Shown: positions 35,155 to 54,109 of the stretch, one piece after another | How positions within the stretch are numbered: the stretch's first letter is position 1 | How the letters are laid out: each line of letters starts with the position of its first letter | NCBI GenBank assembly: GCA_002269645.1 | Contig: NIVC01000012.1 | Coordinates: 248,001 to 312,000, forward strand | Length of the DNA stretch: 64,000 nucleotides | Source of the DNA: Macrostomum lignano | Lineage: Eukaryota | Reading direction: 5' to 3' | The notes under the pieces: generated by a model | The model's database searches: none | The model's input: the letters and a program-made list of their open reading frames with translations, nothing else | Told to the model about the DNA's origin: nothing | Program-made: the position numbers and the translations under genes

Positions 35155-35416
35155 TCAAACCCGCTGCTTAATAACCATGGTGATAAGTTTGGGTTTCGAA
35201 CCCAGCTGCGGTGGATCGCAATCTTCATCGGCCTCTAAAACTCTTAGCTGCAGTCGCTTCTTAGCTGGCGTTGGCCTCCTGCGGCACAGGTGCAGCAGGA
35301 ACTGCAGTTGGCTCTCGGCCGATGCCACTTCAGCTTCCAGACGTTGATTGTTGGCAACCAGTTGCGAGTGTCGGGACTTGGCCAGCGAGTTGGATTGGCG
35401 CTGCTTTGCTCTGTAT
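35155..35416 (-). CDS. ATF4: ATF4/ATF5-like bZIP exon 2 (RYRAKQRQSNSLAKSRHSQLVANNQRLEAEVASAESQLQFLLHL...)
   Basis: Acceptor gccctcag|A (phase 2) completes CG from exon 1, giving NREAAYRYRAKQR plus heptad leucines; stop TGA 35157-35155. Not in the ORF track. Confidence 0.8.
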
Positions 35417-35524
35417 CTGAGGGCGGGGGCGAGGCTTGGCGTTGTGTGTGCGACTGTTGGGGCATGTGGACTTAGAGCAGAGATAGAAGGGATAGAGCAG
35501 AGAGGAGTTCACAGAGGAAGAGAT

Positions 35525-35810
35525 CAGGGGGGGGGTTAAAGAGGGGGAGTCAGAGAGGGGAGCGTCAGTGAGGGGGAGGTCGGAGAGCCGATTAGAGAGG
35601 GGGGACGTCAGGGAGGGGGAGGTCCGAGAGGGGATGTCAGAGAGGGGGGAGGGCCGGGAGGGAGCGATCAGAGAGGGGGAGGTCCGGGAGGGAGTGATCA
35701 GAGAGGGGGAGGTCAGAGAGGGGATGTTAGAGAAGGGGAGGGCCGGGAGGGAGCGATCAGAGAGGGGGAGGTCCGAGAGGTCAGAGAGGGGATCCGAGAG
35801 AGGGAGTCAG
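35525..35810. repeat. G/A-rich ~20-bp tandem repeat in the bZIP intron
   Basis: gagagggggaggtccgggagggag-type units. Confidence 0.8.
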
Positions 35811-35832
35811 TGGGCATCAGTTAGCAACCAAC

Positions 35833-36431
35833 CGATAGGCAGCCTCTCGATTAGCCTCGCTTTTAGTCTTCATATTAGAAGATTTCGACTTCCTGCCGAA
35901 ACCGCCGCCTTTGCCTCTGCCTCTGCGAGGCAGCACCTGCGGCGGTGGCGTCTGATCGACAGACGACGTCAATGACGATGACATCACCAAATCTTCATCT
36001 GCGTCGTCATCATCAACATCGTCGAAAACCGGTCGATCCGGCGGCATCAACTCATCGACATCAAAGTCGACACCGTCCAAGTCGAGAAGACAGTCGCGAA
36101 CAGTCGAAGCACCCGCGGTATCTGCCGAGTCTGGCGTAAGAAATGGAAAAATACTATCCATCTCGGCGTCATTAGCAACGGCACTGTTGCTAGGGAAGCC
36201 GTCAAGCAGCACCGATGACACTTCATCATCATCATCGTCCGTACGATGGGAGGCTGGGCCGGACTTAGGCAACAGCGAATCAGTTAGCCAAACTGATGCG
36301 GATGACAGGAGCAGCTCAACGTCTTGCTCAGCGTGACGAGCATCCTGACAGAGACTAAGATATGAAGAGAAATCTCCACCACTGGCATCCGTCATTGGCG
36401 GAGTCACCATTGAAGCCATGTTGGCAGTCAT
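35833..36431 (-). CDS. ATF4: ATF4/ATF5-like bZIP exon 1 (acidic activation-like region + basic region KTKSEANREAAYR)
   Basis: Asp-rich N-terminus and N-x7-R basic motif when spliced at CG|GTTGGT; similar to ATF4 QNKTAATRYRQKKR...L..N..L...L.YLK.L. Confidence 0.8.
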
Positions 36432-36531
36432 GCTTGCAGAAGTGATTATGCTTGGTAGTAGTAGTAGTATTAGTAGCAGTAGTCTTATTGTACTTTGAGC
36501 ACTGAGTTGACTGGCAGGTAAAGGTAGCCAT
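36355..36531 (-). promoter_or_regulatory. uORF2 (58 aa) overlapping the ATF4-like start out of frame
   Basis: gccaacATGg strong Kozak context, 100 nt upstream of the main ATG; open to TAG at 36357-36355; 77-nt overlap. Confidence 0.7.
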
Positions 36532-36605
36532 GTTGGCGTCTGTGTTGGGTTTTCGTTGCGTTTCTTGACTGTCTGGCCTTACGGGGCGCAGCGGTGTAGC
36601 TGGTG

Positions 36606-36635
36606 CTACTGGCGATTCATCTCTGCTGACGGCAT
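36606..36635 (-). promoter_or_regulatory. uORF1 (MNRQ* from 36620, or MPSAEMNRQ* from 36635)
   Basis: ATG AAT CGC CAG TAG; 74 nt from its stop to uORF2, with no intervening ATG. Confidence 0.6.
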
Positions 36636-36687
36636 CCGAGGAATTATGGATGTATATTAGTAGTATGTGATTTAATTGTTGACGCTT

Positions 36688-36789
36688 TCTGTCTGTCTGT
36701 CAGTCTTAGTGCCTCTCTGTCTGTCTGTCAGTCTTAGTGCCTGTCTGTCTGCCTGTCTTAGTGTCTGTCTGTCTGTCTGTCTGTCTTAG

Positions 36790-36846
<57 letters not shown>

Positions 36847-37049
36847 TAGTGTCGGTCTGTCTGTCTGTCTGTCTGTCTTAGTGTCTGTCTGTCTGTCTGT
36901 CTTAGTGTCGGTCTGTCTGTCTGTCTGTCTGCCTTTCCTAGTGTATGTCGGTCTGTCTGTCTGTCAGCCTGTCTGTCTGTCAGCCTGTCTGTCTGTCTGT
37001 CTTAGTGTCTGTCTGCCTGTCTTAGTGTCTGTCTGTCTGTCTGTCTTAG

Positions 37050-37110
<61 letters not shown>

Positions 37111-37422
37111 TAGTGTTGGTCTGTCTGTCTGTCTGTCTGCCTTTCCTAGTGTATGTCGGTCTGTCTGTCTGTCAGCCTGTCTGTCTGTCAGCCTGTCTTA
37201 GTGTCTGTCTGCCTGTCTTAGTGTCTGTCTGTCTGTCTGTCTTAGTGTCTGTCTGCCTGTCTTAGTGTCTGTCTGTCTGTCTGTCTGTCTTAGTGTCTGT
37301 CTGTCTGTCTGTCTGCCTGTCTGTCTGTCTGTCAGTCTTTGTGCCTGTCTGTCTTAGTCTCTGTCTGTCTGCCTGTCCTAGTGTATGTCGGTCTGTCTGT
37401 CTGTCAGCCTGTCTGTCTGTCA
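36688..37422. repeat. (GTCT)n microsatellite interrupted by CTTAGT
   Basis: Direct reading. Confidence 0.93.
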
Positions 37423-38154
37423 GCCATTAAACAGTTGCAAATACATGAACTTAACAACGTCTCTAATATTTTATATCACTTAATGACAATCAATCTAAAT
37501 CCTAGCACAAAGGTAAATGTAAAAATAAAAAATCCAACATTTACGAGCGTATAAATGTAAAAAATCAATAATCAGAGATACATGTACTGCTTTAGACGAT
37601 GAGCACTATTGCATAATGATTTATTGAATCAGAACTCAGGATTACGAGTATTCCTAGCACAGCCTGTAGACTGTAAAATTATGCAAATTAGAGCCTGACT
37701 ACTGTAAGTATACAGGATGATGCGAACTGAACAAAATGAAGCAGCAATTTGCTATTTGCAATTTTTTAGTGTCCATCAATCTGTAGATATGTGTGATAAG
37801 AGCTATGCAATTTTTTATACCCGGGTGCTATTAAACAACCAAACTTGATAGTTTTTTTCTCACAGTACTATGATTGAATTAATCCGGATTAAATTTGCTT
37901 AAGATAGGACTTAACGAGCTTTCCTATAAATTAGCATCTATACTTTAATCACATTTGTTTTGTTGAGCGCTACTGTCTATGGCAGAAACCAAGAAATCTT
38001 AACGTGTTGTCGCAAAATAACTGCTAATGGCAATATAACGTTTTCTATGTGTTTTTATGTTTCCAAGTTCTACGATAATTAGGAAGCATTTTAGGAAGGT
38101 GCTTTGATTGTAGTTAACACGAAGGAAATTGTCCTGTGAATGTTGAATGGTTGA

Positions 38155-38435
38155 GTCAGCCTGTCTGTCTGTCTGTGTATCCGTCTATCTGAGTGTCAGC
38201 CAGTCAGTCAGTCCGTCTATCTGTCGGTCTGTCTGCCTGTCTGCCTGCCTTTCTGTCAGCCTGTCTGTGTCTGTCTGCCTGTCTGTCTGCCTGCCTGTCT
38301 GTCTGCCTGCCTATCTGTCTGCCTGTCTGCCTGCCTGCCTGTCTGTCTGCCTGTCTGTCTGTCTTCCTGTCTGTCTTCCTGCCTGCCTGTCTGCCTGTCT
38401 GCCCGCCTTTCTGTCTGCCTGTCTAAGTGTCTGTT
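38155..38435. repeat. Degenerate (GTCT/GCCT)n microsatellite
   Basis: Direct reading. Confidence 0.85.
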
Positions 38436-38573: not shown

Positions 38574-39473
38574 TCAGAATCTACTAACACGAATAGGAAT
38601 ATTTTCAGACACCAAATAGTCGTCTTGAAACACGACAACAATGTTGACTTCGAATTCGATTCGGAAATTGGTAGCCGAAACGCTTGGACAGGTGAACAGA
38701 CGCGGCAGCACCATGTGCAGAGGGATTTTAATCCCTCTGGGAGCGTCTCCATCAGCCACTTGGATATTCTGTATCTCAGTAGTCTCTTTAGCGTAGCCTT
38801 CCAGACAGCCGCAGGTCTCTACGCGTACCAGCTGCAGTTCTACACTTTTAATCCGAGTAGCGCACTGCTCAATGACTAGCTCGCCACTCAGTGGCTCAGA
38901 AATACTAATGTGACTCGATGTGAGTTGGCCGGTGACGCGAAATTTCGGTAGACTGGCCTTGTTCTGAACATTGACTACACTGTCCGGGCTGATAGCGAAA
39001 GTTACTGGCGTCTGCGAGCTCGGTTGGCCAGCATTCTTTGGATTGTATTCGACTAAGAACTCGCAAGTTTTGCTGAGATCTTTGTTCAATAGAGAGCGTT
39101 TTAAGTCCAATTGAAGCACGTACTGAATGTTAATGAACACTCCGTGGTATGTCTCATACAGTGTTTTGTTACCCTTGGATTTGAACGGTATTTCAAATGG
39201 GATTTCTGTTAATCCGGTGGTGAATTTGCCAGGCTTAGCTAGTTCTAGTGTGGCTCCGGTCAGTTGAATCGGCTTGATACTGTTATAGAATGCTTCGAAT
39301 ACTCCGACATTTTTTGAGCTAAGCTGCATGCTAACTGTGCCAGTCAGATTCAATGTGAGACCATTGTGACCGCAGTCTTGTTTGCATCGAATCACGGCAT
39401 AGCCGGAGATTGTGTCACCATCGGTGTACGTTTTGTTAATACGCTTCAAACGAATGTCTAAAGTGGCTGCCAT
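38574..39473 (-). CDS. VPS26C: VPS26C/DSCR3 (Retriever complex subunit), intronless, 299 aa
   Basis: LDIRLKR.NK.Y, MQLSSKNVGVFEAFYNSIKPIQL, LYETYHGVF.NIQY, ELQLVRVETCGC.EGY, PRLFTCP, FE.NIVV.F..DYL..EN all match DSCR3. Confidence 0.97.
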   Translation of the reverse strand: MAATLDIRLKRINKTYTDGDTISGYAVIRCKQDCGHNGLTLNLTGTVSMQLSSKNVGVFEAFYNSIKPIQLTGATLELAKPGKFTTGLTEIPFEIPFKSKGNKTLYETYHGVFINIQYVLQLDLKRSLLNKDLSKTCEFLVEYNPKNAGQPSSQTPVTFAISPDSVVNVQNKASLPKFRVTGQLTSSHISISEPLSGELVIEQCATRIKSVELQLVRVETCGCLEGYAKETTEIQNIQVADGDAPRGIKIPLHMVLPRLFTCPSVSATNFRIEFEVNIVVVFQDDYLVSENIPIRVSRF

Positions 39474-39564
39474 TGCGGTTGTAGAGTTGACACATGCAAA
39501 TAGATGGAGTTGAAATATATTAGAAAGACATGATAATTGATTACACCTGACCTAATAGCCAGAT

Positions 39565-39765
39565 GTACAACCGACAGCTCAGCCGTAGTTATTGCTCCAC
39601 TCCAAGGACTGGGGGGCACCCATTTTAAAGCTGGGTTAACTGCAGCAATGCAGAGTTAATGCGTCTTGCTCAAGGACACAAATTGTTGTGAGTGGGTCGA
39701 GAATCGAACCCCCTTAGACCTTTTAGTCGTGAATCCGACGCTCTAATAACCACTAGGCTGCAACC
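39565..39765 (-). mobile_element. tRNA-derived SINE family A (CORE-like), internally deleted
   Basis: Reverse complement of the head and core of 31343-31610 (cttgctcaaggacacaaattg...gggtcgagaatcgaaccc). Confidence 0.82.
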
Positions 39766-40304: not shown

Positions 40305-40898
40305 CTAAGTAGCGATAGTAGTTTTAACCGACAAAGTCTGCAAACAAACTGGGCAAGAGTGCAAAGAGTCGTGCAACAGCCGATCGCAATCGATACAATA
40401 ATGAGACCGACAGTCGCTGCACTGGTAGGCTTCCGTGCTAGCGCCTAGTCTGTCGCCACATCCGCAACAGCCCGTACTGGCCGCCAAGGTGACCTCGGCG
40501 AATGCCTTCAACGGGAACAGGTGCTGATAGGATCTGGCCAGGTGAGCGGCGCTGGCCAAACTTAATCCGCAAATCCGACAATCAACCGGCAGCTCGCAGT
40601 AAAGACAGGCGCACTGGGGGCAGGCGTGAGCGGTGGCCCCGGCTGATAGTACGGTGCCGTGACAGGCGCAAATGCGGATGACATCCTGCTTGGATCTCGG
40701 CTGCTCCTGGCCATCCTGCCCAGCCGAGTAGGGGAAGCCCATTTTGATCAGAGCGGGATCGGGAGCGCTGGCCGGCGGCGGCAGGAAGCTGGACATGATG
40801 TCGGACAGATGGACAGCGTCTAGCGGCACAGAGTAGGTGCCACCAGTGGCCTGGGCGAGTTTGCGCAATACGCGAATATCCGCTGACAGAGATATTAC
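40305..40898 (-). CDS. GTF2H2: TFIIH p44 exon 3 (end of VWA, zinc finger CPQC...C, C-terminal C1/RING-like)
   Basis: tttacag|GTA acceptor; LA..TGG.Y.V.LD..HL, MGFP, CPQC...YCELP..C..CGL.L..A.HLARSY.HLFPL..F, C.DCD...HDSLH.CP.C. Confidence 0.95.
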   Translation of the reverse strand, partial: VISLSADIRVLRKLAQATGGTYSVPLDAVHLSDIMSSFLPPPASAPDPALIKMGFPYSAGQDGQEQPRSKQDVIRICACHGTVLSAGATAHACPQCACLYCELPVDCRICGLSLASAAHLARSYQHLFPLKAFAEVTLAASTGCCGCGDRLGASTEAYQCSDCRSHYCIDCDRLLHDSLHSCPVCLQTLSVKTTIAT

Positions 40899-40999
40899 CT
40901 GTAAATTGGGCAATTTATGGGAAAGGGACGCCAATTGGCAAGGTTTAGAAGGTAAAACAATGTTCCCTAGAGCTTGCACTTTGCCCTTGACGCATCATG

Positions 41000-41590
41000 G
41001 CGGAACAGAGACAGAGAGATGGAGAGAGGCTAGGAAGGAAAGCGTTGGGAGAAAGTAGAAAGAGGGTAAAGAGGGTAGACAAAGGATAGACGAGAGTGAG
41101 GATAGAGGGGAGAGATCTAAGGGGGGGGGGAGGGTAAAATGAGAGAAAGGGAAGCGGGGACGCGAGAGAGAGAGAGAGAGGAAATCAGGTAGAAAGTAAT
41201 TAGAAAGAGGGTAAAGAGGGTAGAGAAAGGATAGACGAGAGTGAGGATAGAGGGGAGAGATCTAAGGGGGGGAGGGTAAAATGAGAGAAAGGGAAGCGGA
41301 GACGCGAGAGAGAGCGGAAATCAGGTAGAGCGGAAAGCGGGTGGAGAGGGGAAGGTGGGTAGACAGGGGAAGGCGGGTAGAGAGAGGAAAGCGGGTAGAG
41401 GGGAAAGCGGGTAGAGGGGAAAGCGGGTAGAGGGGAAAGCAGGTAGAGAGGGCAAGGCGGGTAGAGAGGGGAAAGCGGGTAGAGGGGAAAGCAGGTAGAG
41501 AGGGCAAGGCGGGTAGAGAGGGGAAAGCGGGTAGAGGGGAAGGAGGGTAATTAGAGGAAAGCGGGTAGAGGGAAAGGAGGGTAGGAAGGG
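41000..41590. repeat. G/A-rich intronic repeats: a duplicated ~130-bp block and ~17-bp GCGGGTAGAGGGGAAA units
   Basis: 41060-41200 is repeated at 41215-41330, followed by tandem units. Confidence 0.8.
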
Positions 41591-41658
41591 TACAGATCTA
41601 GGACTTGAAAAACAGTAACAATAAAAGAAAAAAAGGCAGACAGAAATGATTCACTCAC

Positions 41659-42174
41659 CGAACACCTGATCCTAGCCTTGGCCAGTTTGCTAATGGTCGC
41701 ACCGATATCTCCCGGATCGCAGGTGCTCAAGGCTGACACCAGCACGAGAACCTCTTTGCAGGCGTGGCCTGGCAGGGGGCCCAGCGTGTCGTAGGCCATC
41801 TCCAGCAGGTTCTGAAATGACGCCTCCCCTTCGGGACGGGCGGTTTTGCCCGAGCCGGCCTGAGCCAAATCTTTTAGCGCGTCCAAATGTCGCCTGGGAT
41901 TGCCAGTGAGCTCGGTCACTCTCTCGGCCAGCTTCCGTCTGGTCAGCAGTACGCCCAGCTGTCCGATGGGATTCTGATCGAAGAATCCGGACACGAAGTT
42001 GCGCATTGCGGATAGGCAGGCGGCTAAACGGCAGGGTTTGAGATCGGCCAAGCCCATGGTCTCTGAGCAGTCCAGGCACAGCAGCAGGTGCCGCATCATG
42101 CCCAGCTTGCTGGCCCGGCCACCGCCGCCGGGTAGCAGGGCTGCCGCTGCGAGACGGTGCCGGCGCTTGCGGGC
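41659..42174 (-). CDS. GTF2H2: TFIIH p44 exon 2 (Ssl1-like VWA: KLGMMRHL...DLKP.RL...FFDQNPIGQLG...LSTCDPGDI)
   Basis: ccgcag|GCC acceptor and TCG|GTGAGT donor; 172 codons, phase 0/0. Confidence 0.95.
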
Positions 42175-42196
42175 CTGCGGGGTTTGGGGTTCGATA

Positions 42197-42372
42197 CTGA
42201 CTGACTGACTGACTGACTGACTGACTGACTGACTGACTGATTGACTGACTGACTGACTGACTGACTGACTGACTGACTGTCTGACTGACTGACTGTCTGA
42301 CTGTCTGACTGACTGACTGACTGACTGACTGACTGACTGACTGACTGTCTGACTGACTGACTGACTGACTAG
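42197..42372. repeat. (GACT)n microsatellite in GTF2H2 intron 1
   Basis: Direct reading. Confidence 0.95.
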
Positions 42373-42414
42373 CTAACTAAATAAGTCCAATGAGCCCAAT
42401 AACAATTCACCCAC

Positions 42415-42609
42415 CTGCTCCAGACGCCCAACAGCCCCAGCCAGGCGACCCTCCTCATCCTCAGCCAGGGCCTCCCAGGAGCGCTCGAACTGCGACTCCC
42501 AGCGAAAGCCGCCGCCAGAGAGCGCGGCCGCATCCTCGTCCTGAAGCCGGTAGCCGCTGGTGCCCGCTGTGGGTCGCGCAGACGGCTTTGCGAATCCGTA
42601 GTTTGCCAT
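42415..42609 (-). CDS. GTF2H2: TFIIH p44 exon 1 (RWESQFERSWEALAEDEEGRL)
   Basis: Matches the p44 RWE..YERTWE.L.EDE.G motif; CAG|GTGGGT donor, phase 0. Confidence 0.9.
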
Positions 42610-42684
42610 GCTGTTTGCTGTTCAAACTCTTGGCATGCATAAGCATGGGGCTGTGCCTGCTTGACTGACTGGCAATATGATTCA

Positions 42685-43165
42685 CTGGGGATCTGGGAGG
42701 CTGGCCCAGCAACTGAGGATCTGGGAGGCTGGCCCAGCAACTGACACTCTGGGAGGCTGGCCCAGCAACAGACACTCTGGGAGGCTGGCCCAGCAACTGA
42801 GAATCTGAGAGGCTTGCCCAGCAACTGAGCATCTGGGAGGCTGGCCCAGCAACTGGGGATCTGGGAGGCTTGCCCAGCAACTGAGCATCTGGGAGGCTGG
42901 CCCAGCAACTGGGGATCTGGGAGGCTGGCCCAGCAACTGACACTCTGGGAAGCTGGCCCAGCAACTGACACTCTGGGAGGCTGGCCCAGCAACTGGGGAT
43001 CTGGGAGGCTGGCCCAGCAACTGACACTCTGGGAGGCTGGCCCAGCAACAGACACTCTGGGAGGCTGGCCCAACAACTGACACTCTGGGGAGCTGCTGGC
43101 CCGGCAACGGAGGATCTAGGAGGCTGGCTCAGCAACTGGGGATCTGGGAGGCGGGCCCAGCAACT
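42685..43165. repeat. 28-bp GC-rich minisatellite (CTGGGAGGCTGGCCCAGCAACTGACACT) between SURF1 and GTF2H2
   Basis: Period 28 (42721, 42749, ...); about 17 units. Confidence 0.94.
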
Positions 43166-43348: not shown

Positions 43349-43641
43349 TCATCGAATTCGCATAGCCCAGAACACCAGCAGCAGCGCGCCCAGAGAATAC
43401 CAGGTAACAATATAGGACAGGTGCTCGTTACGCAAGCTCAGTCTAGTCTGCCCGCCAATAGGAAAAGTGCCAGCAGATTCACTAGAATCCATGCCAGAAG
43501 CGCAGGCGTCAACAAAGAATGGCAGGGTGTTGAGCTCGCCGCTCAGAGCTTCGACATCGCGGCGTATGCGGCAGGTGACGCCGCGGCGAGCGCTGCGAGA
43601 CTGAGGCCCGACAGCGCCGCTGTTGGCCGGGCTGCGGGCGT
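43349..43641 (-). CDS. SURF1: SURF1 last exon (PIGGQTRLSLRNEHLSYIVTWYSL)
   Basis: ccgcag|AC acceptor, phase 1; diagnostic SURF1 C-terminal motif; stop TGA. Confidence 0.92.
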
Positions 43642-43659
43642 CTGCGGGCGATTCAAGGC

Positions 43660-44300
43660 ATGCTGCCTTCATCTCTGACCCTTCCCAACATGCTGCCTTC
43701 ATCTCTGACCCTTCCCAACACGCTGCCTTCATCTCTGACGCTTTCCAACATACTGCCTTCATCTCTGACCCTTCCCAACATGCTGCCTTCATCTCTGACC
43801 CTTCCCAACATGCTGCCTTCATCTCTGACCCTTCCCAACATGCTGCCTTCATCTCTGACCCTTCCCAACATGCTGCCTTCATCTCTGACCCTTCCCAACA
43901 CGCTGCCTTCATCTCTGACGCTTCCCAACATACTGCCTTCATCTCTGACCCTTCCCAACATGCTGCCTTCATCTCTGACCCTTCCCAACATGCTGCCTTC
44001 ATCTCTGACCCTTCCCAACACGCTGCCTTCATCTCTGACCCTTCCCAACATGCTGCCTTCATCTCTGACCCTTCCCGACATGCTGCCTTCATCTCTGACC
44101 CTTCCCAACATGCTGCCTTCATCTCTGACTCTTCCCAACATGCTGGCTTCATCTCTGACCCTTCCTAACCTGCTGCCTTCATCTCCGACCCTTCCTAACA
44201 TGCTCCCTTCATCTCTGACCCTTCCTAACATGCTTCCTTTATCTCTGACCCTTCCTAACATGCTGCCTTCATCTCTGACCCTTCCCTCCATGCTCCCTTT
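43660..44300. repeat. 30-bp minisatellite (CATGCTGCCTTCATCTCTGACCCTTCCCAA) filling a SURF1 intron
   Basis: About 21 near-identical units. Confidence 0.96.
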
Positions 44301-44369
44301 ACTTTTTTTCAGCCAACATGTATCTTAAATTTATTCAAGCATGAACCAGCAGCACCAATAGCTCCTCAC

Positions 44370-44649: not shown

Positions 44650-45200
44650 ACCGTATTAGTGTATTACCTATTACCGTATCAGATAGTGTATTACCTATTA
44701 CTGTATCAGATAGTATATTTCCTATTACCCTAATTAGTGGTAGTACCTATTACCCGAATTAGTGTATTACTAATTACCCTAATTAGTGTATTACCTATTG
44801 CCCTAATTAGTGTATTATCTATTACCCTAATTAGTGTATTACCTATTACCGTATCAGATAGTGTATTGCCTATTACCGTATCAGATAGTGTATTACCTAT
44901 TACCCTAATTAGTGTATTACTAATTATCCTAATTAGTGTATTACCTACTACCCTAATTAGTGTTTATCTATTACCCTAATTAGTGTATTAACTATTACCC
45001 TAATTACCTAATTATTTAATTATCTAATTACTCTAATTATCTATTACCCTAATTAGTGTATTACCTATTACCCTTATTAGTGCATTATACCTATTACCCT
45101 TATTAGTACATTACACATAATTCTCTAATTAGCGTATTACCAATTATCCTAGTTAGTATATTAACTTTTACCGTATCAGATACATGTAGTGTTACCTATT
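44650..45200. repeat. AT-rich ~21-bp degenerate tandem repeat (ATTAGTGTATTACCTATTACCCTA-like)
   Basis: Direct reading; lies in a SURF1 intron. Confidence 0.85.
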
Positions 45201-45395
45201 GTACTTTGTTAAAACTCTTGACACAAGGAGCGTCACTCTAGAACAATAACCACCAAATCTTGTCCTTATTAGTGTTTTATCTATTAGCTAAAACAGTAAA
45301 ACTTTTTAAAAATCAATTAGAACTCTATAAAATACTGGCTTTATATCTCTCACTAGCTACTAATTAGTATGAAATATATTATTATCAAAACTGAC

Positions 45396-45843
45396 CGTCA
45401 GCACCAGCACTTGATTTCGGATCGATAAGATGCCGCGGTCCAATCAGAACCTCGCCATCGTGATCGAATTCGCCTATAATTCTAACAGGTCTGAACTCCA
45501 TGTCGTCTAAAGACTTAGCCATCAGCTCCTTCACCGAGCCGCCATCAACAATCACAGGCGGTTGAGTAGTTCTCCTATTCAACGATTCAATCAAATCCAA
45601 TTTCCATTGCCGTCGATAAACCTGCCAGGTGCCTAAACAGAAGCAGATTGCTGGAAATGCTAGAAACCATTTGTTACGAGGACCGTCGCTATCGCGACCT
45701 TTGTAAGAGTTGGAGTAGCCGCGTTGCACTGTCGTGTATTTGAAAGCATGTTGGCTTGCTGCTTCTAGCAAAGGGTAATGCGGATTTCTCAAGCAGCGAA
45801 GTGGCTGTAGGAGCAGCACCGCTCGTTGACAATGAAAGCTGGA
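45396..45843 (-). CDS. SURF1: SURF1 first identifiable exon (transit-peptide-like N-terminus, LGTWQVYRRQWK, EFRPV...G.FDH); no initiator ATG
   Basis: Acceptor tttctttttcttgcag|TCC (phase 0) and donor G|GTCAGT (phase 1). The ORF-track start is a TTG inside the acceptor. Confidence 0.9.
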
Positions 45844-45884
45844 CTGCAAGAAAAAGAAATTTAACAGTTGCGAGCGCGCAAACT

Positions 45885-46190
45885 TGTACCTTCCTGTACC
45901 CCTGTGTCTACTTCCTGTACTCCCATGTCTACTTCCTGTACTCCCATGTCTACTTCCTGCACTCCCATGTCTACTTCCTGTGCCCCCATGTCTACTTCCT
46001 GTACTCCCATGTCTACTTCCTGTACTCCCATGTCCACTTCCTTTACTCCCATGTCCACTTCCTGTGCCCCCATGTCTACTTCATGTGGTCCCTTGTCTAC
46101 TTCCTGTGCCACCATGTCTACTTCCTGTACTCCTATGTCCACTTCCTGTACTCCCGTGTCTACTTCCTGTACTCCCATGCCTACTTCCTG
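45885..46190. repeat. 21-bp minisatellite (TGTCTACTTCCTGTACTCCCA)
   Basis: About 14 units, just upstream of the SURF1 acceptor. Confidence 0.93.
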
Positions 46191-47418: not shown

Positions 47419-48642
47419 TCAATCGGTATCGCTATCGCTAAGCTGTAGATCATTCTGCAACAATTCCAAATCGCTGAGCACTTTTGTCGGAGCGGCAGAT
47501 GTTGCGGTGGTAACAGTAACAGCAGCAGCTGTTGTTGCAGGCTGCGCTGGAGGCTGACTGACGACTTCGACGAATTCTTCATCGGAAGAGGCGGAAGAAT
47601 CAGACGAGACAGAATCGTCATCGTCGTTAGAATTTAAAACTGCCGGCTTAGCCGGTTGAGAAGACTTTTGTTGTTGTTTCTTTAATTTCGGCTTCTGTGG
47701 GGCTTGAGTAGGCTTCTTAGCATCTGAATCGTCATCGTCTGATGAGGATAACGAAGAAGATGAAACTGAAGACACCGATGAAGCATCAGAAAGAGTGGCG
47801 GCGGCCACAACTTTTTCAGATTTCGACTTTTTAGCAACCGGCGGTTGTGGCTGCTTTTTCTGCTTTTTCTGCTGCTGCTCCAGTTCCTTTTTCTTTTGAG
47901 CTTTCTTCTTTTCTCTCTCCTGCTCTCGCTCTCTCTCCCGTTCTCTTTCCCTCTCTTTCTCTCGTTCTTTTTCGCGTTCACGTTCGCGTTTAGCCTCAGC
48001 TTCGGCTTCCGTGTCTGTCCCGTGCTCGTGTTTCTTTTTCTTTTTCTTCTGTGGCTGCTGCTGCTGCTGCTGTGAGGCAGCTTTCTCGGGCTTGCTTTTA
48101 CCAGTCTCACTAGACGATATCTTTCTATGGGAAGCTTGCACAGACGGCTGCTTGTGACTATTTGAACCAGAAACAGTGCCACTAGAAGAAGAAGACTTTT
48201 TCGGCACAGTTGTAGCCGCCGATGCCGCTTCAGCCGCTTTCATGCCCAGCTTCTTTTCAACCAAATCTAATTGGCACACTTCAATCCTAGCCTTCTTTAA
48301 TTGTACGTTCAAATTCACTCGCTCAATACGAGCCTCGCGAGTGATCGGGTCAAGAATTAACACGGCATCCTTGTGACACGGACGCTTGTGACCTTTGAAA
48401 ATAGTGTGCGACAGACTGCTAGCGGAGCCGTGAGCAAGCGAAACCGTGACATCGTCTGTAGAGCCGACCTCAACCAGACCCGGCTTAGACTGGTCCACAC
48501 TGGCTGGCATGAAGTCGTAGCGAAACGTAGAGAAACTTGCTCGATTCCTGGCGGCCGGTGTTGAACCGAACGTGTCGCCAATCTTCAGCGTGTACCGACC
48601 GCGCATGGCCGATGCCAGCGAAGTGTCAGACGATGAAGACAT
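47419..48642 (-). CDS. EAF1: ELL-associated factor (EAF1/2 family), single ORF of ~407 aa
   Basis: F.TFRYDFMPASVD, IFKGHKRPCHKDAVLI, V.LKK.R N-terminal EAF domain; acidic/Ser/Lys-rich middle; C-terminal LQNDLQLSDSD. First in-frame ATG is at 48642. Confidence 0.93.
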   Translation of the reverse strand: MSSSSDTSLASAMRGRYTLKIGDTFGSTPAARNRASFSTFRYDFMPASVDQSKPGLVEVGSTDDVTVSLAHGSASSLSHTIFKGHKRPCHKDAVLILDPITREARIERVNLNVQLKKARIEVCQLDLVEKKLGMKAAEAASAATTVPKKSSSSSGTVSGSNSHKQPSVQASHRKISSSETGKSKPEKAASQQQQQQPQKKKKKKHEHGTDTEAEAEAKREREREKEREKEREREREREREQEREKKKAQKKKELEQQQKKQKKQPQPPVAKKSKSEKVVAAATLSDASSVSSVSSSSLSSSDDDDSDAKKPTQAPQKPKLKKQQQKSSQPAKPAVLNSNDDDDSVSSDSSASSDEEFVEVVSQPPAQPATTAAAVTVTTATSAAPTKVLSDLELLQNDLQLSDSDTD

Positions 48643-48764
48643 CCGATCGGTGTCAATACTTCCAAGATTTATGATTTTCAAACGTCAATGTTTCTATTGT
48701 GAAAATCATGAATAGAAATTATGGTCACAAATTATTTAGGATACGTAAGTTATTGCGATTATTC

Positions 48765-49400
48765 CACTGAGTACTCTACTGAGTATTCTACAGAGTACTC
48801 TACTGAGTATTCTACTGAGTACTCTACTGAGTATTCTACTGAGTACTCTACTGAGTATTCTACTAAGTACTCTACTAAGTACTCTACTGAGTACTCTACT
48901 GAGTATTCTACTGAGTACTCTACTGAGTATTCTACAGAGTACTCTACTGAGTATTCTACAGAGTACTCTACTGAGTATTCTACTGAGTACTCTACTGAGT
49001 ATTCTACTAAGTACTCTACTGAGTACTCTACTGAGTACTCTACTGAGTATTCTACTGAGTACTCTACTGAGTATTCTACTGAGTATTCTACTGAGTACTC
49101 TACTGAGTATTCTACTGAGTACTCTACTGAGTATTCTACTGAGTACTCTACTGAGTATTCTACTGAGTACTCTACTGAGTATTCTACTGAGTACTCTACT
49201 GAGTATTCTACTGAGTATTCTACTGAGTATTCTACTGAGTATTCTACTGAGTATTCTACTGAGTATTCTACTGAGTACTCTACTGAGTATTCTACTGAGT
49301 ACTCTACTGAGTATTCTACTGAGTATACCATTGATTAATCTACTCACTAATCTACTAAGTATTTTATTGAGTACTTTACTGAATACTCTACCGAGGCAAT
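48765..49400. repeat. 12-bp minisatellite (TACTGAGTA[C/T]TC)
   Basis: Direct reading; source of the STEY ORF. Confidence 0.96.
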
Positions 49401-49959
49401 CAGTAAAGTACTAACCGGGACCGGTTCTACTTAACTTACTTAACTTATACCAATGGTTTTTTCTTAGACAATCTTTAATTCAGTCAGTGAGTCTCTCAGA
49501 TATATGATTACGAGTAGAATATAAAAATGACAATATACTATATGGCTCTATCTCTATTGATAATAATTAATGATATAATATTTAGACGAACTTATTAAAA
49601 GGTTATTTTTGTATAAGAGACAAGACAACATAAAAAGGAAGATAATTTTAACCAGATTGGCACTATATATTTTACAATTACTATATATTCATTTAGAAGC
49701 CTTCTAACAACACAAAAGATTAACAAATCATAAACATATTTCAACGACTAATTGTATGCTTAAGCATAAAGTAAATTAACAACGCAAGAAACAAGTTAAT
49801 ATGTTTGACTATTAAGTTAATCTAACATGAAATACAATAAAACAATTTTTCTGAAATAAAATTTTAACAAAATATACAGAATTTAATTCCACAAAATCTT
49901 TATTTCAAACAGATTTTAAACAGGTTTGGATTCAATAGTCTAGCAGGTGGAAGGCGCTC

Positions 49960-50885
49960 GTCAGGGTTAGCGCCAATCTAATTGGTGTCAGGGTTAGCGC
50001 CAATCTAATTGGTGTTAGTGTTAGCGCCAATCTAATTGGTGTCAGGGTTAGCGCCAATCTAATTGGTGTCAGGGTTAGCGCCAATCTAATTGGTGTCAGG
50101 GTTAGCGCCAATCTAATTGGTGTCAGGGTTAGCGCCAATCTAATTGGTGTCAGGGTTAGCGCCAATCTAATTGGTGTCAGGGTTAGCGCCAATCTAATTG
50201 GTGTCAGGGTTAGCGCCAATCTAATTGGTGTCAGGGTTAGCGCCAATCTAATTGGTGTCAGGGTTAGCGCCAATCTAATTGGTGTCAGGGTTAGCGCCAA
50301 TCTAATTGGTGTCAGGGTTAGCGCCAATCTAATTGGTGTCAGGGTTAGCGCCAATCTAATTGGTGTCAGGGTTAGCGCCAATCTAATTGGTGTCAGGGTT
50401 AGCGCCAATCTAATTGGTGTCAGGGTTAGCGCCAATCTAATTGGTGTCAGGGTTAGCGCCAATCTAATTGGTGTCAGGATTAGCGCCAATCTAATTGGTG
50501 TCAGGGCGCCAATCTAATTGGTGTCAGATGGAGCGCCAATCTAATTGATGTCAGGGTTAGCGCCAATCTAATTGATGTCAGGGTTAGCGCCAATCTAATT
50601 GATGTCAGGGCGCCAATCTAATTGGTGTCAGATGGAGCGCCAATCTAATTGATGTCAGGGTTAGCGCCAATCTAATTGATGTCAGGGCGCCAATCTAATT
50701 GGTTTCAGATGGAGCGCCAATCTAATTGGTGTTAGGGGTTAGCGCCAATCTAATTGGTGTCAAATGGAGCGCCAATCTAATTGGTGTCAGGGTTAGCGCC
50801 AATCTAATTGGTGTCAGATGGAGCGCCAATCTAATTGGTGTCAGATAGAGCGCCAATCTAATTGGTGTCAGGTTTAGCGTCAAAC
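49960..50885. repeat. 27-bp minisatellite (GTCAGGGTTAGCGCCAATCTAATTGGT)
   Basis: About 19 identical units, then degenerate variants. Confidence 0.96.
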
Positions 50886-50964: not shown

Positions 50965-51435
50965 TCACAACAAAATGCGATACTTCTCGCTTTTAGGCAC
51001 GTGACTAATCACTAGGCGACCATCGTAGCTCAAGGACGCGAATAGCCAAGGATCCGTTGCGCACCACACAGCGGCATAGACGCTATCCTCGTGTTCTTCA
51101 ACAACTGACACAGTGCGATCCTCGTCTAGCTCTGGCTGCTGCTGTCGTCTATCGTCGTCATCGTCATCATCGTCTAGATCGTCGTCTAGAGACAGTACCG
51201 GTTCGGACGAGATGCTACGATTATTAGTTAGATAAACTTTAGCGTCAGTACCGCCAGACAGTACCAATTGATCATGGTAGGGGTTGAATTGGACGCAACA
51301 GGCCCAGTGCTTGTGTAGGCGAAGCATCTTCACAGGATTGGATGGTTGTCGGGTGTCCCAGAATCTGATTGCACCATCATCTCCGGAGCTGGCTAAATAG
51401 TATTGCTTGTTCGGGTTGTAGTCCACGCACCGAGC
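50965..51435 (-). CDS. EIPR1: EIPR1/TSSC1 WD40 exon 3 (DYNPNKQYYLASSGDD...HEDSVYA..W...DPWLFASLSYDGRLVI.HVP..EKYRILL)
   Basis: cacaag|GCT acceptor, phase 0; diagnostic C-terminus. Confidence 0.95.
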   Translation of the reverse strand, partial: ARCVDYNPNKQYYLASSGDDGAIRFWDTRQPSNPVKMLRLHKHWACCVQFNPYHDQLVLSGGTDAKVYLTNNRSISSEPVLSLDDDLDDDDDDDDRRQQQPELDEDRTVSVVEEHEDSVYAAVWCATDPWLFASLSYDGRLVISHVPKSEKYRILL

Positions 51436-51469
51436 CTTGTGGTGGGTAGGTTTAGGCGCTTACTTAGCT

Positions 51470-52065
51470 GGGTTTCAGGGAGTGATTTAGGGTAGATTTT
51501 AGGGAGTGATTTAGGCTAGGTTTCTAGGGGGTGATTTAGGGTAGGTTTCTAGGGGTGATTTAGGGTAGGTTTTAGGGAGTGATTTAGGTTAGGTTTCTAG
51601 GGGTGATTTAGGGTAGGTTTTAGGGAGTGATTTAGGTTAGGTTTCTAGGGGTGATTTAGGGTAGGTTTTAGGGAGTGATTTAGGTTAGGTTTCTAGGGGT
51701 GATTTAGGGTAGGTTTCTAGGGGTGATTTAGGTTAGGTTTCTAGGGGTGATTTAGGGTAGGTTTCTAGGGGTGATTTAGGGTAGGTTTCTAGGGGTGATT
51801 TAGGGTAGGTTACTAGGGAGTGATTTAGGGTAGGTTACTAGGGAGTGATTTAGGGTAGGTTACTAGGGAGTGATTTAGGGTAGGTTTCTAGGGAGTGATT
51901 TAGGGTAGGTTTCTAGGGAGTGATTTAGGGTAGGTTTCTAGGGTTGATTTAGGGTAGGTTTCTAGAGGGTGATTTAGGGTAGGTTTCTAAGGGGTGATTT
52001 AGGGTAGGTTTCTAGAGGGTGATTTAGGGTAGGTTTCTAGGGGGTGATTTAGGGTAGGTTTCTGA
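51470..52065. repeat. 23-24-bp G-rich minisatellite containing TTTAGGG (GGGGTGATTTAGGGTAGGTTTCTA)
   Basis: About 25 units in EIPR1 intron 2. Confidence 0.93.
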
Positions 52066-52138
52066 GACGACCTATCATGAGTTTCAAAGATGGTTCTTGG
52101 GTAGGTTTAAAGGCCATTTCTAATGCCAATCTGTTTAC

Positions 52139-52613
52139 CTGTCCATTATGCGCGTTGTCAATGACAACAACCGGGCCGTCGCTAGGCGGGCAGCGAACAT
52201 CGAAGCCTCTTAATCCGCCAGAATCGCAGGCGGCGATCACCTGCTGAGCAGAATGATGAGGGTTCCAAGCCGCATGCCAGTACCGCAGTTGAGATCGACC
52301 GTCTTTAGCTGGCAGGTGAGCCAACAGACGGACCGCACCGCTGCCGAGGCCCAGCTGATACAGCCCGCCGTCAGATACCAGCACGGCTTCCGCTCTTTCC
52401 GGATGAAACGCTAAACAGCGCGGCTCACCCTGCTGCTCGAGTTCAATAGAACCAATCGATTGCAGAGATTCAACTGAGGACAATGAAGACGAGGTTAGAG
52501 CGTCCTCTGAGCTATTTCGATGCCGAGGCGTCTGGTTGTCTTCTTCTTCTGGCAGTTTCCATAGGCACCAGCGCTTAGCAACGCTTGGATTCGTGCCCGA
52601 GTCCATGGTTACC
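52139..52613 (-). CDS. EIPR1: EIPR1/TSSC1 exon 2 (LWKLPE...WNPHH...D.R...IDNAHNGQ)
   Basis: aatttag|G acceptor (phase 2) and CAG|GTAAAC donor; WNPHH motif. Confidence 0.9.
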
Positions 52614-52774
52614 CTAAATTAATGAAGTGGTAAATTTGAATAATTTATTATTAGTCACCTTTCTGTGAGCCTAAAATTAAACTTAATGACGCCTGATAAG
52701 TCTACGCAATGATGCCAATTAAATCTAATTGTCTAAATGACGCTAGGAAAATCTCAATTGCGTCATATTTAATA

Positions 52775-53135
52775 ACTTGAGTGAGTTCAAATGGCGCCAA
52801 ATGGATTCGAATGGCGCCAAATTGATTCGAATGGCGCCAAATAGATTCTAATGGCGCCAAATAGACTCTAATGACGCCAAATGGATTCGAATGGCGCCAA
52901 ATGGATCCGAAAATGGCGCCAAATGAAATATAATGACGCCAAATATATCTAAATGACGCCAAACGGATTCAAATGGCGCCAAACGGATTCGAATGGCGCC
53001 AAACGGATTCGAATGGCGCCAAATTGACCCTACTGGCGCCAAATGGATTCTAATGGCGCCAAATAGACTCTAATGGAACTAAATGGTTGGAAATAGCGCC
53101 AAATAGATACAAATAGTGCTAAATAGATTGAAACA
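52775..53135. repeat. 20-bp minisatellite (GGCGCCAAATGGATTCGAAT) in EIPR1 intron 1
   Basis: Direct reading. Confidence 0.9.
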
Positions 53136-53164
53136 GCACCAAAATTAAACAAAACCCTACTAAC

Positions 53165-53427
53165 CTGTTAAAAACAGTAGCACACAGATTGGGGTTATGC
53201 GGCGCCACAGACACAGACCAGATCTCATCTCGGCCATGATCAAATATTCTTTTGCTAACACTATTGGTGTCGGCATCAAATGTCAATAAATGCAGCTGAT
53301 TGTGCTCAACTCGAAGGCCTTGAGTGCCAATAATAAACTGCTGGCTGTCATCTAAGGCTGGCACTGAGCACAGGGCTCTGGCCTGGGTCTCTAGGCCATA
53401 GATTACTGGTGGATCATCAATGTCCAT
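53165..53427 (-). CDS. EIPR1: EIPR1/TSSC1 exon 1 (MDIDDPPVIYGLETQARAL...FIIGTQGLR..NQLH)
   Basis: Matches the TSSC1 N-terminus PVIYGLE.QARAL; AG|GTTAGT donor, phase 2. Confidence 0.93.
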
Positions 53428-54109
53428 CTTGATTTCTGATTTAATGATAGACACTGAAAACATTACAAGGGATACATTATAACAAAATTTGTTAATAACT
53501 TTATCATTTTTTTATCAGGCTATATCTAGAAACTGAATTATATCAAAAATTAAGCCTAACCTAGAACTATTATAAAAGCAATATTGGAAAACTTTCTAAT
53601 AGAGACAGATTCAATAAGTAATTTAGCAATTTAGCAACACCTAAGAGCCTTGACATCTTAATAACTCTTCTATGCGCTTTGATATCTATCTTCTTGTAAG
53701 CCCTAATATTGTGCAATTTCCCCAATAAGCCTTGAAATTTCAAAAAATTATTATGTAAATCATTGGCATCTCAGTAATTATCCCATGAGCACTTTATAGT
53801 TGACAAAGGAAATTTTTTATATTGTTGAATCCTAACCCTAATTTTATATAGCACTATGAGTAGGTTGTAGCATACATGCGCAACTGCTGGCCGACCTGGC
53901 CGATCCGGCCACCGTAAATCGTGGCTGACCAGAGGTAAGTCGCAAAATTGAGAAAACCAAAAACCAAAAACCAAAAACCAAAAACAGAAAAACACAAGAA
54001 CCAAGAAAGGCAAGAGGAAAGCGAAAGAAAGAGCAGTTCAGGGAAAATGGTGAAGCAAAAGAAAAGCAATTCGCAAAAGAAGCAAACTAAGTTGTAAAAA
54101 TAATCAGGT

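What the first reader, a model, noticed from the sequence alone, without database searches (positions are those of the whole stretch)
35155..53460. Operon-like run of six co-directional housekeeping genes, a candidate polycistron resolved by SL trans-splicing
EIPR1, EAF, SURF1, GTF2H2, VPS26C and the ATF4-like gene are all on the - strand with no intervening opposite gene. Stop-to-start gaps are ~2.3, 1.6, 0.74, 0.83 and ~2 kb, largely filled by tandem repeats or SINE/MITE insertions, leaving little unique sequence for promoters. Unpaired acceptor-like sites sit just upstream of several starts: ttttcag ~20 nt before the EIPR1 ATG, ttttcacaatag before EAF, tttgaacag before GTF2H2, and the SURF1 acceptor. 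Operons of functionally unrelated conserved genes processed by spliced-leader trans-splicing are established in nematodes, tunicates and flatworms. That this cluster is one is inference, and VPS26C lacks an obvious proximal AG. Two endosomal-recycling genes (EIPR1, EARP/GARP interactor; VPS26C, Retriever) and two Pol II factors (EAF, TFIIH p44) co-occur.
Basis: partly seen in the sequence, partly recalled or inferred. Interest (0 to 1): 0.75.

Follow-up and report, generated by a model that had tools for sequence, protein, structure and literature searches.

The report
Known flatworm operon-type gene cluster
The six same-strand genes lie in the published genome of the flatworm Macrostomum lignano, where spliced-leader operons are already catalogued, so this is an ordinary example, with shared transcripts on record for only parts of it.

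Summary
The window is Macrostomum lignano assembly Mlig_3_7, scaffold NIVC01000012.1:248001-312000. EIPR1, EAF, SURF1, GTF2H2, VPS26C and an ATF4-like bZIP gene all lie on the minus strand, with the stated gaps and many minisatellites.

Spliced-leader (SL) trans-splicing and operons of 2-9 genes with repeat-inflated spacers are already published for this species and assembly.

No reads were available, so support for SL splicing is indirect:
- SURF1 has no genomic ATG, and the SL's terminal AUG is in frame.
- At GTF2H2 and VPS26C the window carries TGCATG, the SL 3' end, where a paralogous copy has a canonical ..YTNCAG acceptor. I read these as scars of the published RNA-seq (Pilon) polishing. 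This explains why VPS26C "lacks an AG".

Polycistronic transcription is recorded in locus tags of paralogous copies. SURF1 and GTF2H2 share one transcriptional unit, as do VPS26C and bZIP.

No unit joins EIPR1 to EAF, or GTF2H2 to VPS26C, in any copy. A single six-gene polycistron is therefore plausible (about 0.35) but unproven.

Verdict: a known kind of feature, of low novelty. The useful by-products are the polishing scars and the SL-donated SURF1 start codon.

The parts
50965..53460 (-). EIPR1. Acceptor TTTTCAG at 53460-53454, ATG at 53427. Coding exons 53427-53165, 52613-52139 and 51435-50965 (the annotated 5'-partial CDS starts at 53445). NCBI PAA94269, locus tag Mlig031360g1.
   Evidence: Pfam Beta-prop_EIPR1. 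The model equals the deposited protein. In paralog L005 the annotated CDS starts in the first full codon after TTTTCAG|.
47419..48712 (-). EAF, a single coding exon with ATG at 48642 and stop at 47419. Candidate SL junctions: ..TTCATG|ATTTTCAC (exon from 48706, possible scar) or cacaatag|AAAC (exon from 48693).
   Evidence: Pfam EAF. Annotated 417-aa 5'-partial CDS at 48672-47419. L002 has TGCATG| where the window has TTCATG|.
43349..45849 (-). SURF1. Acceptor tttctttttcTTGCAG at 45849-45844. Exons 45843-45396, 44594-44370 and 43641-43349. There is no genomic ATG before the first transmembrane helix, and the SL-terminal AUG is in frame, giving MSSFHCQRAV... NCBI PAA94267, locus tag Mlig021063g4.
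   Evidence: UniProt models start at an internal Met or are fused to GTF2H2.
40305..42639 (-). GTF2H2 (TFIIH p44). TGCATG at 42639-42634 is an SL 3'-end scar over the acceptor TTCCAG that L002 retains. The exon starts at 42633 and the ATG is at 42609. Coding exons 42609-42415, 42174-41659 and 40898-40305. NCBI PAA94266, locus tag Mlig009498g2.
38574..39499 (-). VPS26C, intronless. TTGCATG at 39499-39493 is an SL 3'-end scar over the acceptor TTTTCAG that L001 retains. The exon starts at 39492, the ATG is at 39473 and the stop at 38574.
   Evidence: In L001 and L002 the annotated 5'-partial CDS starts in the first full codon after the junction.
35155..36639 (-). ATF4-like bZIP gene. Possible scarred junction ..TG|CCGTCAG, with the variable block at 36639-36635 and the exon from 36632. 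uORF1 at 36620-36606. uORF2 at 36531-36355 overlaps the main ATG (36431) out of frame. Coding exons 36431-35833 and 35416-35155. NCBI PAA94264, locus tag Mlig009092g1.
48760..50883 (.). EIPR1-EAF spacer, with minisatellites of 27 bp x 34.6 copies (49960-50883) and 24 bp x 26.5 copies (48760-49395). 698 nt of this spacer is not tandem repeat.
45890..46190 (.). 21-bp minisatellite in the EAF-SURF1 spacer, with 14 copies here and 52 in L002. 1274 nt lies outside tandem repeats between the EAF stop and the SURF1 junction.
42684..43165 (.). 28-bp minisatellite that fills most of the SURF1-GTF2H2 spacer. Only 233 nt is not tandem repeat, including the SURF1 3'UTR (ATTAAA 73 nt after the stop).
39530..39765 (.). 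SINE-like dispersed repeat in the GTF2H2-VPS26C spacer, with other copies at 31343-31643 and 30497-30597.
   Evidence: ARAGORN finds no tRNA gene.
36688..38424 (.). VPS26C-bZIP spacer, with a (CTGT)n tract at 38161-38424 and a 20-44-bp repeat array at 36688-37421.

Best explanation
[quoted passage not shown] Their mRNAs are capped by trans-splicing of the single 35-nt spliced leader (SL, ...TTGCATG).

The genes are transcribed, at least in blocks, as polycistronic precursors. Polyadenylation of the upstream cistron and SL addition to the downstream one then cut these into mature mRNAs.

Shown or recorded:
- Gene order, strand and gene models.
- SURF1 has no start codon of its own.
- SL 3'-end sequence sits exactly over the GTF2H2 and VPS26C acceptors.
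- In paralogous copies, SURF1-GTF2H2 and VPS26C-bZIP each share a transcriptional-unit name.

Inferred:
- EAF belongs to the SURF1 unit.
- The five spacers pass the published rule for M. lignano operons (repeat-adjusted distance below 1 kb).

Whether the blocks [EIPR1], [EAF-SURF1-GTF2H2] and [VPS26C-bZIP] are one six-gene operon or two to three adjacent units is open.
For: Organism and background:
- The window is 100% identical to Mlig_3_7 scaffold NIVC01000012.1 (species).
- Published for this assembly: 30% of genes are SL-spliced and 15% are in operons of 2-9 genes. The acceptor motif is [T/C]TNCAG. Repeats inflate operon spacers, and the operon rule is a repeat-adjusted distance below 1 kb.

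SL junctions:
- SURF1 exon 1 opens at tttctttttcTTGCAG| and has no in-frame ATG before the transmembrane helix. All three deposited CDSs are 5'-partial, and UniProt models start at an internal Met. The SL AUG is in frame.
- SL-donated start codons are documented in flatworms.
- GTF2H2: the window and L001 have cttaTGCATG|CCAAGAG, where L002 has cttaTTCCAG|.
- VPS26C: the window and L002 have tattTGCATG|TGTCAAC, where L001 has tattTTTCAG|.
- These two sites and a block at the bZIP 5' end are the only multi-base substitution clusters in unique sequence between copies.
- Only 23 TGCATG occur in 128 kb counting both strands.
- The assembly was polished with Pilon using RNA-seq mapped by STAR. End-to-end alignment is stated for the transcriptome mapping. 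This would overwrite the bases next to a junction with the SL end.
- The annotated 5' ends of VPS26C (L001, L002) and EIPR1 (L005) fall in the first codon after the CAG|.

Polycistrons:
- Locus tags: Mlig032346g2 is SURF1 and g3 is GTF2H2. Mlig009232g1 is VPS26C and g2 is bZIP.
- The naming rule 'TU Mlig030697.1 contains genes .g1 and .g2' is stated in Supplementary Fig. 5a.
- A UniProt model fuses SURF1 and GTF2H2. Such chimeric models are used as operon indicators in flatworms.

Spacers:
- Non-repeat sequence from the stop codon to the next junction is 698, 1274, 233, about 576 and about 943 nt before subtracting 3'UTRs.

Synteny:
- The gene order is kept in all three assembly copies.
Against: - No RNA reads, SL track, poly(A) track or cap data could be examined. 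All SL evidence is indirect.
- Transcriptional-unit prefixes differ between EIPR1 and EAF, and between GTF2H2 and VPS26C, in every copy. These could be true unit boundaries with internal promoters.
- In the window copy itself, GTF2H2 (Mlig009498g2) and bZIP (Mlig009092g1) carry unit names of their own.
- EAF locus tags could not be retrieved, so its link to SURF1 is inferred from the g-numbering.
- The evidence for junctions at EAF and bZIP is weak.
- Several annotated 5' ends lie 2-21 nt from the inferred junctions.
- The EAF-SURF1 spacer passes the 1-kb rule only if the EAF 3'UTR is at least about 275 nt.
- About 60% of SL-spliced genes in this species are not in operons.
- Regions of 2 kb or less are sufficient promoters in transgenes.
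Confidence: 0.78

Rival explanations
1. All six genes form one operon, transcribed from a single promoter upstream of EIPR1 as one precursor of about 18 kb, and resolved by SL trans-splicing.
For: - All five spacers fall under, or plausibly under, the published repeat-adjusted 1-kb limit.
- The authors state that assembled transcriptional units tend to break in repeat-rich operon spacers. The two unlinked spacers hold 1.56 kb of minisatellite and a SINE-like repeat.
- There is no annotated gene for 10 kb on either side.
- Operons of up to nine genes are reported.
Against: - The unit names split at the same two spacers in all copies examined.
- Of M. lignano operons, 93% have two or three genes.
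- EIPR1 itself looks trans-spliced, so even its own promoter is unlocated.
- No read-through evidence was available.
Confidence: 0.35
2. These are six independent genes, each with its own promoter and outron. Each is SL-spliced on its own, and the shared unit names reflect read-through noise or over-merging by the transcript assembler.
For: - Most SL-spliced genes in this species are monocistronic.
- Raw gaps of 0.7-2.3 kb could hold compact promoters.
- StringTie/TACO merging across close same-strand genes is a known failure mode (my own knowledge).
Against: - Two different gene pairs share units in two different copies.
- The SURF1-GTF2H2 spacer has only about 130 nt of non-repeat sequence beyond the likely poly(A) signal. 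This is the modal operon spacing reported for the species.
- An independent gene predictor also fused SURF1 and GTF2H2.
Confidence: 0.12
3. The co-orientation is chance and SL trans-splicing is not involved. The acceptor-like motifs are coincidental.
For: - Six co-oriented genes has p of about 0.03 on its own.
- YTNCAG is a short motif. In the window itself only two of six genes have it within 30 nt of the ORF start.
Against: - SURF1 cannot be translated into a full protein without a donated AUG.
- The SL 3' end sits exactly on two acceptors.
- The species-wide data argue against it.
Confidence: 0.02

Closest known systems
Macrostomum lignano transcriptional units and operons (Wudarski et al. 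2017, PMC5730564; Ustyantsev & Berezikov 2021, PMC8629364)
   Same: - Same species and the same assembly.
- A single 35-nt SL ending in AUG.
- Same-strand conserved genes, with spacers inflated by minisatellites and transposable elements.
- Unit names shared by neighbouring genes.
- A cluster size of six lies within the reported range of 2-9.
   Different: Nothing in kind. Six genes would be in the rare upper tail, since 93% of operons have 2-3 genes. The full six-gene unit is not recorded as one transcriptional unit.
Caenorhabditis elegans SL2-type operons
   Same: - A polycistronic precursor.
- 3'-end formation of the upstream gene coupled to SL addition downstream.
- Functionally unrelated housekeeping genes.
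- A modal spacing of about 100 nt once repeats are removed.
   Different: M. lignano has one SL and no SL2 specialised for downstream cistrons. The raw spacers here are 0.7-2.3 kb, not about 100 nt.
Operons and SL-donated initiator AUG in parasitic flatworms (Schistosoma, cestodes; Cheng et al. 2006 as cited in PMC9851317; PMC12582326)
   Same: - The SL ends in AUG and can supply the start codon, as inferred here for SURF1.
- Chimeric gene models mark operons, as with the SURF1-GTF2H2 fusion model here.
   Different: Operon calls in those species use a gap of 300 bp or less. The gaps in this free-living species are much longer because of repeats.
Tunicate operons (Ciona, Oikopleura)
   Same: SL-resolved polycistrons of conserved genes.
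   Different: Ciona operons have no intercistronic sequence. Here there are long spacers.

Membership tests
M. lignano operon (rule of Ustyantsev & Berezikov 2021) | Immediately adjacent genes on the same strand, with no opposite-strand gene between them | tested here: met
   Six annotated minus-strand genes with none between them. Plus-strand ORFs are repeat-derived.
M. lignano operon (rule of Ustyantsev & Berezikov 2021) | Downstream gene is SL trans-spliced: SURF1, GTF2H2, VPS26C | tested here: met
   The evidence is indirect. SURF1 lacks an ATG and the SL AUG is in frame. The SL 3' end overwrites the acceptor that a paralog retains, at GTF2H2 and VPS26C.
M. lignano operon (rule of Ustyantsev & Berezikov 2021) | Downstream gene is SL trans-spliced: EAF and the ATF4-like bZIP gene | tested here: inconclusive
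   Only partial scar-like patterns (..CATG| and ..TG|) and nearby AG acceptors. bZIP is g2 of a unit in L001, which implies an SL cut there.
M. lignano operon (rule of Ustyantsev & Berezikov 2021) | Repeat-adjusted intergenic distance below 1 kb | tested here: inconclusive
   Upper bounds from the stop codon to the junction are 698, 1274, 233, about 576 and about 943 nt. Four of five pass outright. The EAF-SURF1 spacer passes only with a 3'UTR of at least about 275 nt. True 3' ends are not available.
Polycistronic transcription unit | One precursor transcript spans neighbouring genes | tested here: inconclusive
   Recorded through shared unit names for SURF1-GTF2H2 (L002 copy) and VPS26C-bZIP (L001 copy). 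Not recorded for EIPR1-EAF or GTF2H2-VPS26C in any copy. No reads were seen.
Polycistronic transcription unit | A single promoter, with no internal capped transcription starts | not testable with these tools
   This needs RAMPAGE or cap data, or reporter assays.
C. elegans SL2-type operon | A specialised second SL for downstream cistrons | not tested
   The literature reports a single SL in M. lignano. No SL RNA gene lies in the window.
ATF4 family (for the last gene) | bZIP domain plus a short uORF1 and a uORF2 that overlaps the main start out of frame | tested here: met
   bZIP_2 scores 22.9 bits against a cut-off of 22.3. uORF1 lies at 36620-36606 and uORF2 at 36531-36355, overlapping the ATG at 36431. 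Orthology to ATF4 was not tested by phylogeny, and the PDB sequence search found nothing.

The most novel reading that the evidence does not exclude
The TGCATG-for-NCAG replacements might not be polishing artefacts. They could be real germline changes, in which cDNA of SL-spliced mRNA repaired or converted the gene's 5' end and wrote the SL terminus into the genome. That would destroy the acceptor in some homeologous copies, uncouple those copies from the operon, and drive divergence between duplicated chromosomes.
Probability: 0.05. Interest if true: 0.7.

Novelty: already known. Interest (0 to 1): 0.22.

Why it matters
The operon question itself has little weight. SL-resolved operons with repeat-swollen spacers are an established, genome-wide feature of M. 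lignano, and parts of this locus are already annotated as shared transcriptional units.

Two by-products have practical value.

1. The reference assembly seems to carry RNA-seq polishing scars that erase trans-splice acceptor AGs and replace them with the SL's last bases.
   - This would bias motif surveys. Only 9551 of 21,754 annotated junctions showed the acceptor motif in the published survey.
   - It would also bias gene models and guide or primer design at 5' ends.
   - The scars can serve as read-free markers of SL junctions.

2. SURF1 appears to depend entirely on the SL for its start codon. This is a clean test case for SL-AUG initiation in a flatworm in which stable transgenesis is available.

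Tried and rejected
- Exact look-ups of the 299-aa VPS26C ORF and of several EAF forms found nothing. EAF locus tags therefore stayed unknown.
- No Logan or RNA-derived contigs exist for these proteins in the collection, so transcript 5' ends could not be read directly.
- Supplementary tables of the two M. lignano papers held no entry for these genes.
- I considered that VPS26C is a retrogene carrying a full-length fossil SL. I rejected this because the 28 nt upstream of TTGCATG are no more SL-like than random genomic 38-mers (p about 0.18), and the same upstream sequence occurs in the copy with an intact acceptor.
- Neither an SL RNA gene nor any Rfam family is in the window. There are no tRNA genes.
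- Brute-force intron enumeration gave hundreds of models or none. I replaced it with homology-guided models that match the deposited proteins.
- Differential conservation of spacers versus coding sequence among copies carries no information, because the spacers are as conserved as the exons.
- Bacterial promoter and terminator scans were not used, as they do not apply here.


Full report
**What the window is.** The intronless VPS26C ORF (38574-39473, minus strand) is 99% identical to a Macrostomum lignano protein and only about 60% identical to other animals. Fetching the contigs that encode it gave three loci of assembly Mlig_3_7 (GCA_002269645.1). One of them, L003, is 100% identical over 20,915 bases to window 49488-28574. 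The window is therefore NIVC01000012.1:248001-312000. L001/L005 (NIVC01001060.1) and L002 (NIVC01001395.1) are paralogous or duplicated copies. They are 90-99% identical to the window and carry the same gene order.

**Check of the observation.**
- Pfam confirms EIPR1, EAF, SURF1, TFIIH p44 (Ssl1, VWA_2, C1_4) and a bZIP domain.
- Homology-guided exon models reproduce the deposited proteins exactly:
  - EIPR1: 53445-53165, 52613-52139, 51435-50965.
  - SURF1: 45831-45396, 44594-44370, 43641-43349.
  - GTF2H2: 42609-42415, 42174-41659, 40898-40305.
  - bZIP: 36431-35833, 35416-35155.
  - EAF and VPS26C are single coding exons.
- All six genes are on the minus strand, and nothing is annotated between them or within 10 kb on either side.
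- Stop-to-start gaps are 2322, 1575, 739, 831 and 2142 nt.
- From each stop codon to the next SL junction, tandem repeats make up 69, 19, 67, 0 and 47% of the sequence. The fourth gap holds a SINE-like dispersed repeat of about 236 nt.
'Largely repeats' is fair for two gaps, with a third about half repeat.

**What is already known for this organism.**
- M. lignano adds one 35-nt spliced leader (SL), CGGTCTCTTACTGCGAAGACTCAATTTATTGCATG, to about 30% of its genes.
- About 15% of genes are assigned to operons of two to nine genes.
- The trans-acceptor motif is [T/C]TNCAG.
- The authors showed that repeats inflate the spacers between operon genes. Once repeats are subtracted, the modal spacer is about 100 bp. 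They call an operon when the adjusted distance is below 1 kb and the downstream gene is SL-spliced.
- The genome paper reports that nearly 7% of assembled transcripts are multi-gene precursors. These 'transcriptional units' are cut into genes at SL and poly(A) signals.

**Evidence for SL trans-splicing: SURF1.**
- No reads were available, so I looked for traces in the sequence.
- SURF1 exon 1 begins right after tttctttttcTTGCAG|. It has an open frame but no ATG before the first transmembrane helix.
- The deposited CDS is 5'-partial in all three copies.
- Independent UniProt models either start at an internal Met that would remove the helix, or are fused to GTF2H2.
- Joining the SL puts its terminal AUG in frame and yields MSSFHCQRAVLLLQPLRCLRNPH..., which I judge to look like a mitochondrial presequence (not tested with a predictor).
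- SL-donated initiator codons are documented in Schistosoma.

**Evidence for SL trans-splicing: polishing scars.**
- Comparing the copies gave an unexpected result.
- At VPS26C, L001 reads ctattTTTCAG|TGTCAAC, a canonical acceptor 19 nt before the ATG. The window and L002 read ctattTGCATG|TGTCAAC.
- At GTF2H2, L002 reads cttaTTCCAG|CCAAGAG, 24 nt before the ATG. The window and L001 read cttaTGCATG|CCAAGAG.
- GCATG is the last five bases of the SL.
- TGCATG occurs only 23 times in 128 kb counting both strands.
- These sites, plus a block at the bZIP 5' end, are the only multi-base substitution clusters in unique sequence between the copies.
- The Methods of the genome paper explain them. The Canu assembly was polished with Pilon using Illumina DNA reads and RNA-seq reads mapped with STAR. 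End-to-end alignment is stated for the transcriptome mapping.
- Reads that begin a few bases inside the SL would then align with terminal mismatches. Where RNA depth exceeds DNA depth, they would overwrite positions -2 to -5, which is exactly the extent seen.
- The distribution does not follow the relatedness of the copies. The VPS26C scar is shared by the window and the more distant L002, but not by L001. This fits stochastic polishing better than inheritance.
- On either reading, the scars imply mature mRNAs with the SL joined at 42633 and 39492.
- At the junction I propose, the SL AUG opens only a 4-codon uORF. At aacag it would open an 83-codon out-of-frame ORF across the start.

**Weaker junction evidence.**
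- EAF shows ..TTCATG|ATTTTCAC in the window and L001, and TGCATG| in L002.
- The bZIP gene shows ..TG|CCGTCAG in all three copies, preceded by a five-base block that differs in each copy.
- For EIPR1 the acceptor TTTTCAG is intact. In L005 the annotated CDS starts in the first codon after it.

**Evidence for polycistronic transcription.**
- GenBank locus tags keep the authors' unit names. Supplementary Fig. 5a states that unit Mlig030697.1 contains genes Mlig030697.g1 and .g2.
- In L002, SURF1 is Mlig032346g2 and GTF2H2 is Mlig032346g3.
- In L001, VPS26C is Mlig009232g1 and the bZIP gene is Mlig009232g2.
- SURF1 is Mlig021063g2 in L001 and g4 in the window, which implies a two-gene unit in each copy.
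- The upstream partner is most likely EAF, but the EAF tags could not be retrieved.
- The SURF1-GTF2H2 spacer has only 233 non-repeat bases including the 3'UTR. That leaves about 130 nt beyond the ATTAAA signal, which is the classic operon spacing.
- A chimeric SURF1-GTF2H2 UniProt model is the kind of artefact used elsewhere to flag flatworm operons.

**What is not shown.**
- In every copy the unit name changes between EIPR1 and EAF and between GTF2H2 and VPS26C.
- The authors warn that units break in repeat-rich spacers. These two spacers hold 1.56 kb of minisatellite and a SINE-like element.
- A real internal promoter is equally compatible with what I could see.
- By the published rule the whole run would probably be called one operon. 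Upper-bound adjusted distances are 698, 1274, 233, about 576 and about 943 nt before removing 3'UTRs. That rule is a heuristic.
- Several annotated 5' ends sit 2-21 nt from the inferred junctions. I attribute this to assembler-defined rather than SL-defined ends, but I could not verify it.

**Verdict.**
- SL trans-splicing of most or all of the genes, and polycistronic transcription of at least the SURF1-GTF2H2 and VPS26C-bZIP pairs, are well supported (about 0.78).
- A single six-gene polycistron is plausible at about 0.35.
- Six independent genes is about 0.12.
- The co-occurrence of two endosomal and two Pol II genes has no support beyond co-occurrence. The operon genes reported for this species are mostly evolutionarily conserved.
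- The phenomenon is already known for this species and assembly, so novelty and interest are low.

**Side findings.** The assembly scars, the SL-dependent SURF1 start codon, and the ATF4-type uORF pair in front of the last gene.

Noticed in passing
window 42639-42634 and 39499-39493 (weaker at 48710-48707 and 36639-36633); intact acceptors at L002:7131-7136 and L001:9994-10000: The last bases of the spliced leader (..GCATG) replace the trans-splice acceptor (..NCAG) in some assembly copies but not others. This is most simply a scar of the published Pilon polishing with RNA-seq reads. It erases acceptor AGs in the reference genome and can serve as a read-free marker of SL junctions.
   Followed up: yes
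window 45849-45396 (SURF1 exon 1): SURF1 has no genomic start codon. Only the AUG at the end of the spliced leader, in frame after TTGCAG|, gives a full protein with an N-terminal presequence and the first transmembrane helix. Database models start at an internal Met or are fused to GTF2H2.
   Followed up: yes
window 36632-36355: The bZIP gene has the classic ATF4 leader. A very short uORF1 (36620-36606, MNRQ*) is followed by a 58-codon uORF2 (36531-36355) that overlaps the main ATG (36431) out of frame. If the SL joins at 36632, its AUG extends uORF1 to MPSAEMNRQ*.
   Followed up: partly
window 33559-32768 (minus strand): A seventh same-strand ORF of 263 aa has a C-type lectin domain (Pfam E=4.7e-5). 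It is not in the NCBI annotation and is much more diverged between the assembly copies than the six operon-type genes.
   Followed up: partly
window 38574-39473 and 47419-48642: VPS26C and EAF have no introns in the coding region here. Every intron of the other four genes (two each in EIPR1, SURF1 and GTF2H2, one in bZIP) contains a minisatellite. A retrogene origin for VPS26C with a full SL fossil was tested and is not supported.
   Followed up: partly
window 1-26955: Satellite content is extreme. It includes a 9-kb array of the 10-mer GTTACAGTGA (4590-13639), a 2.1-kb array of a 12-mer (1-2122), (ACAG)n over 1.5 kb (19006-20550), and several other arrays of 0.5-1.5 kb.
   Followed up: no
window 39530-39765, 31343-31643, 30497-30597: A SINE-like dispersed repeat with a GGTTCGATTCTC box sits about 40 nt upstream of the VPS26C junction and recurs twice elsewhere in the window. 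ARAGORN calls no tRNA.
   Followed up: partly
window 45890-46190 versus L002:2677-3772: The 21-bp minisatellite in the EAF-SURF1 spacer has 14 copies in the window and 52 in the L002 copy. Spacer length in this cluster therefore varies by more than 0.8 kb between copies without any change in gene order.
   Followed up: no
window 27047-27562 (plus strand): A 171-aa ORF that looks like leucine-rich repeats (LDLSWN motifs) is not annotated in the NCBI record.
   Followed up: no
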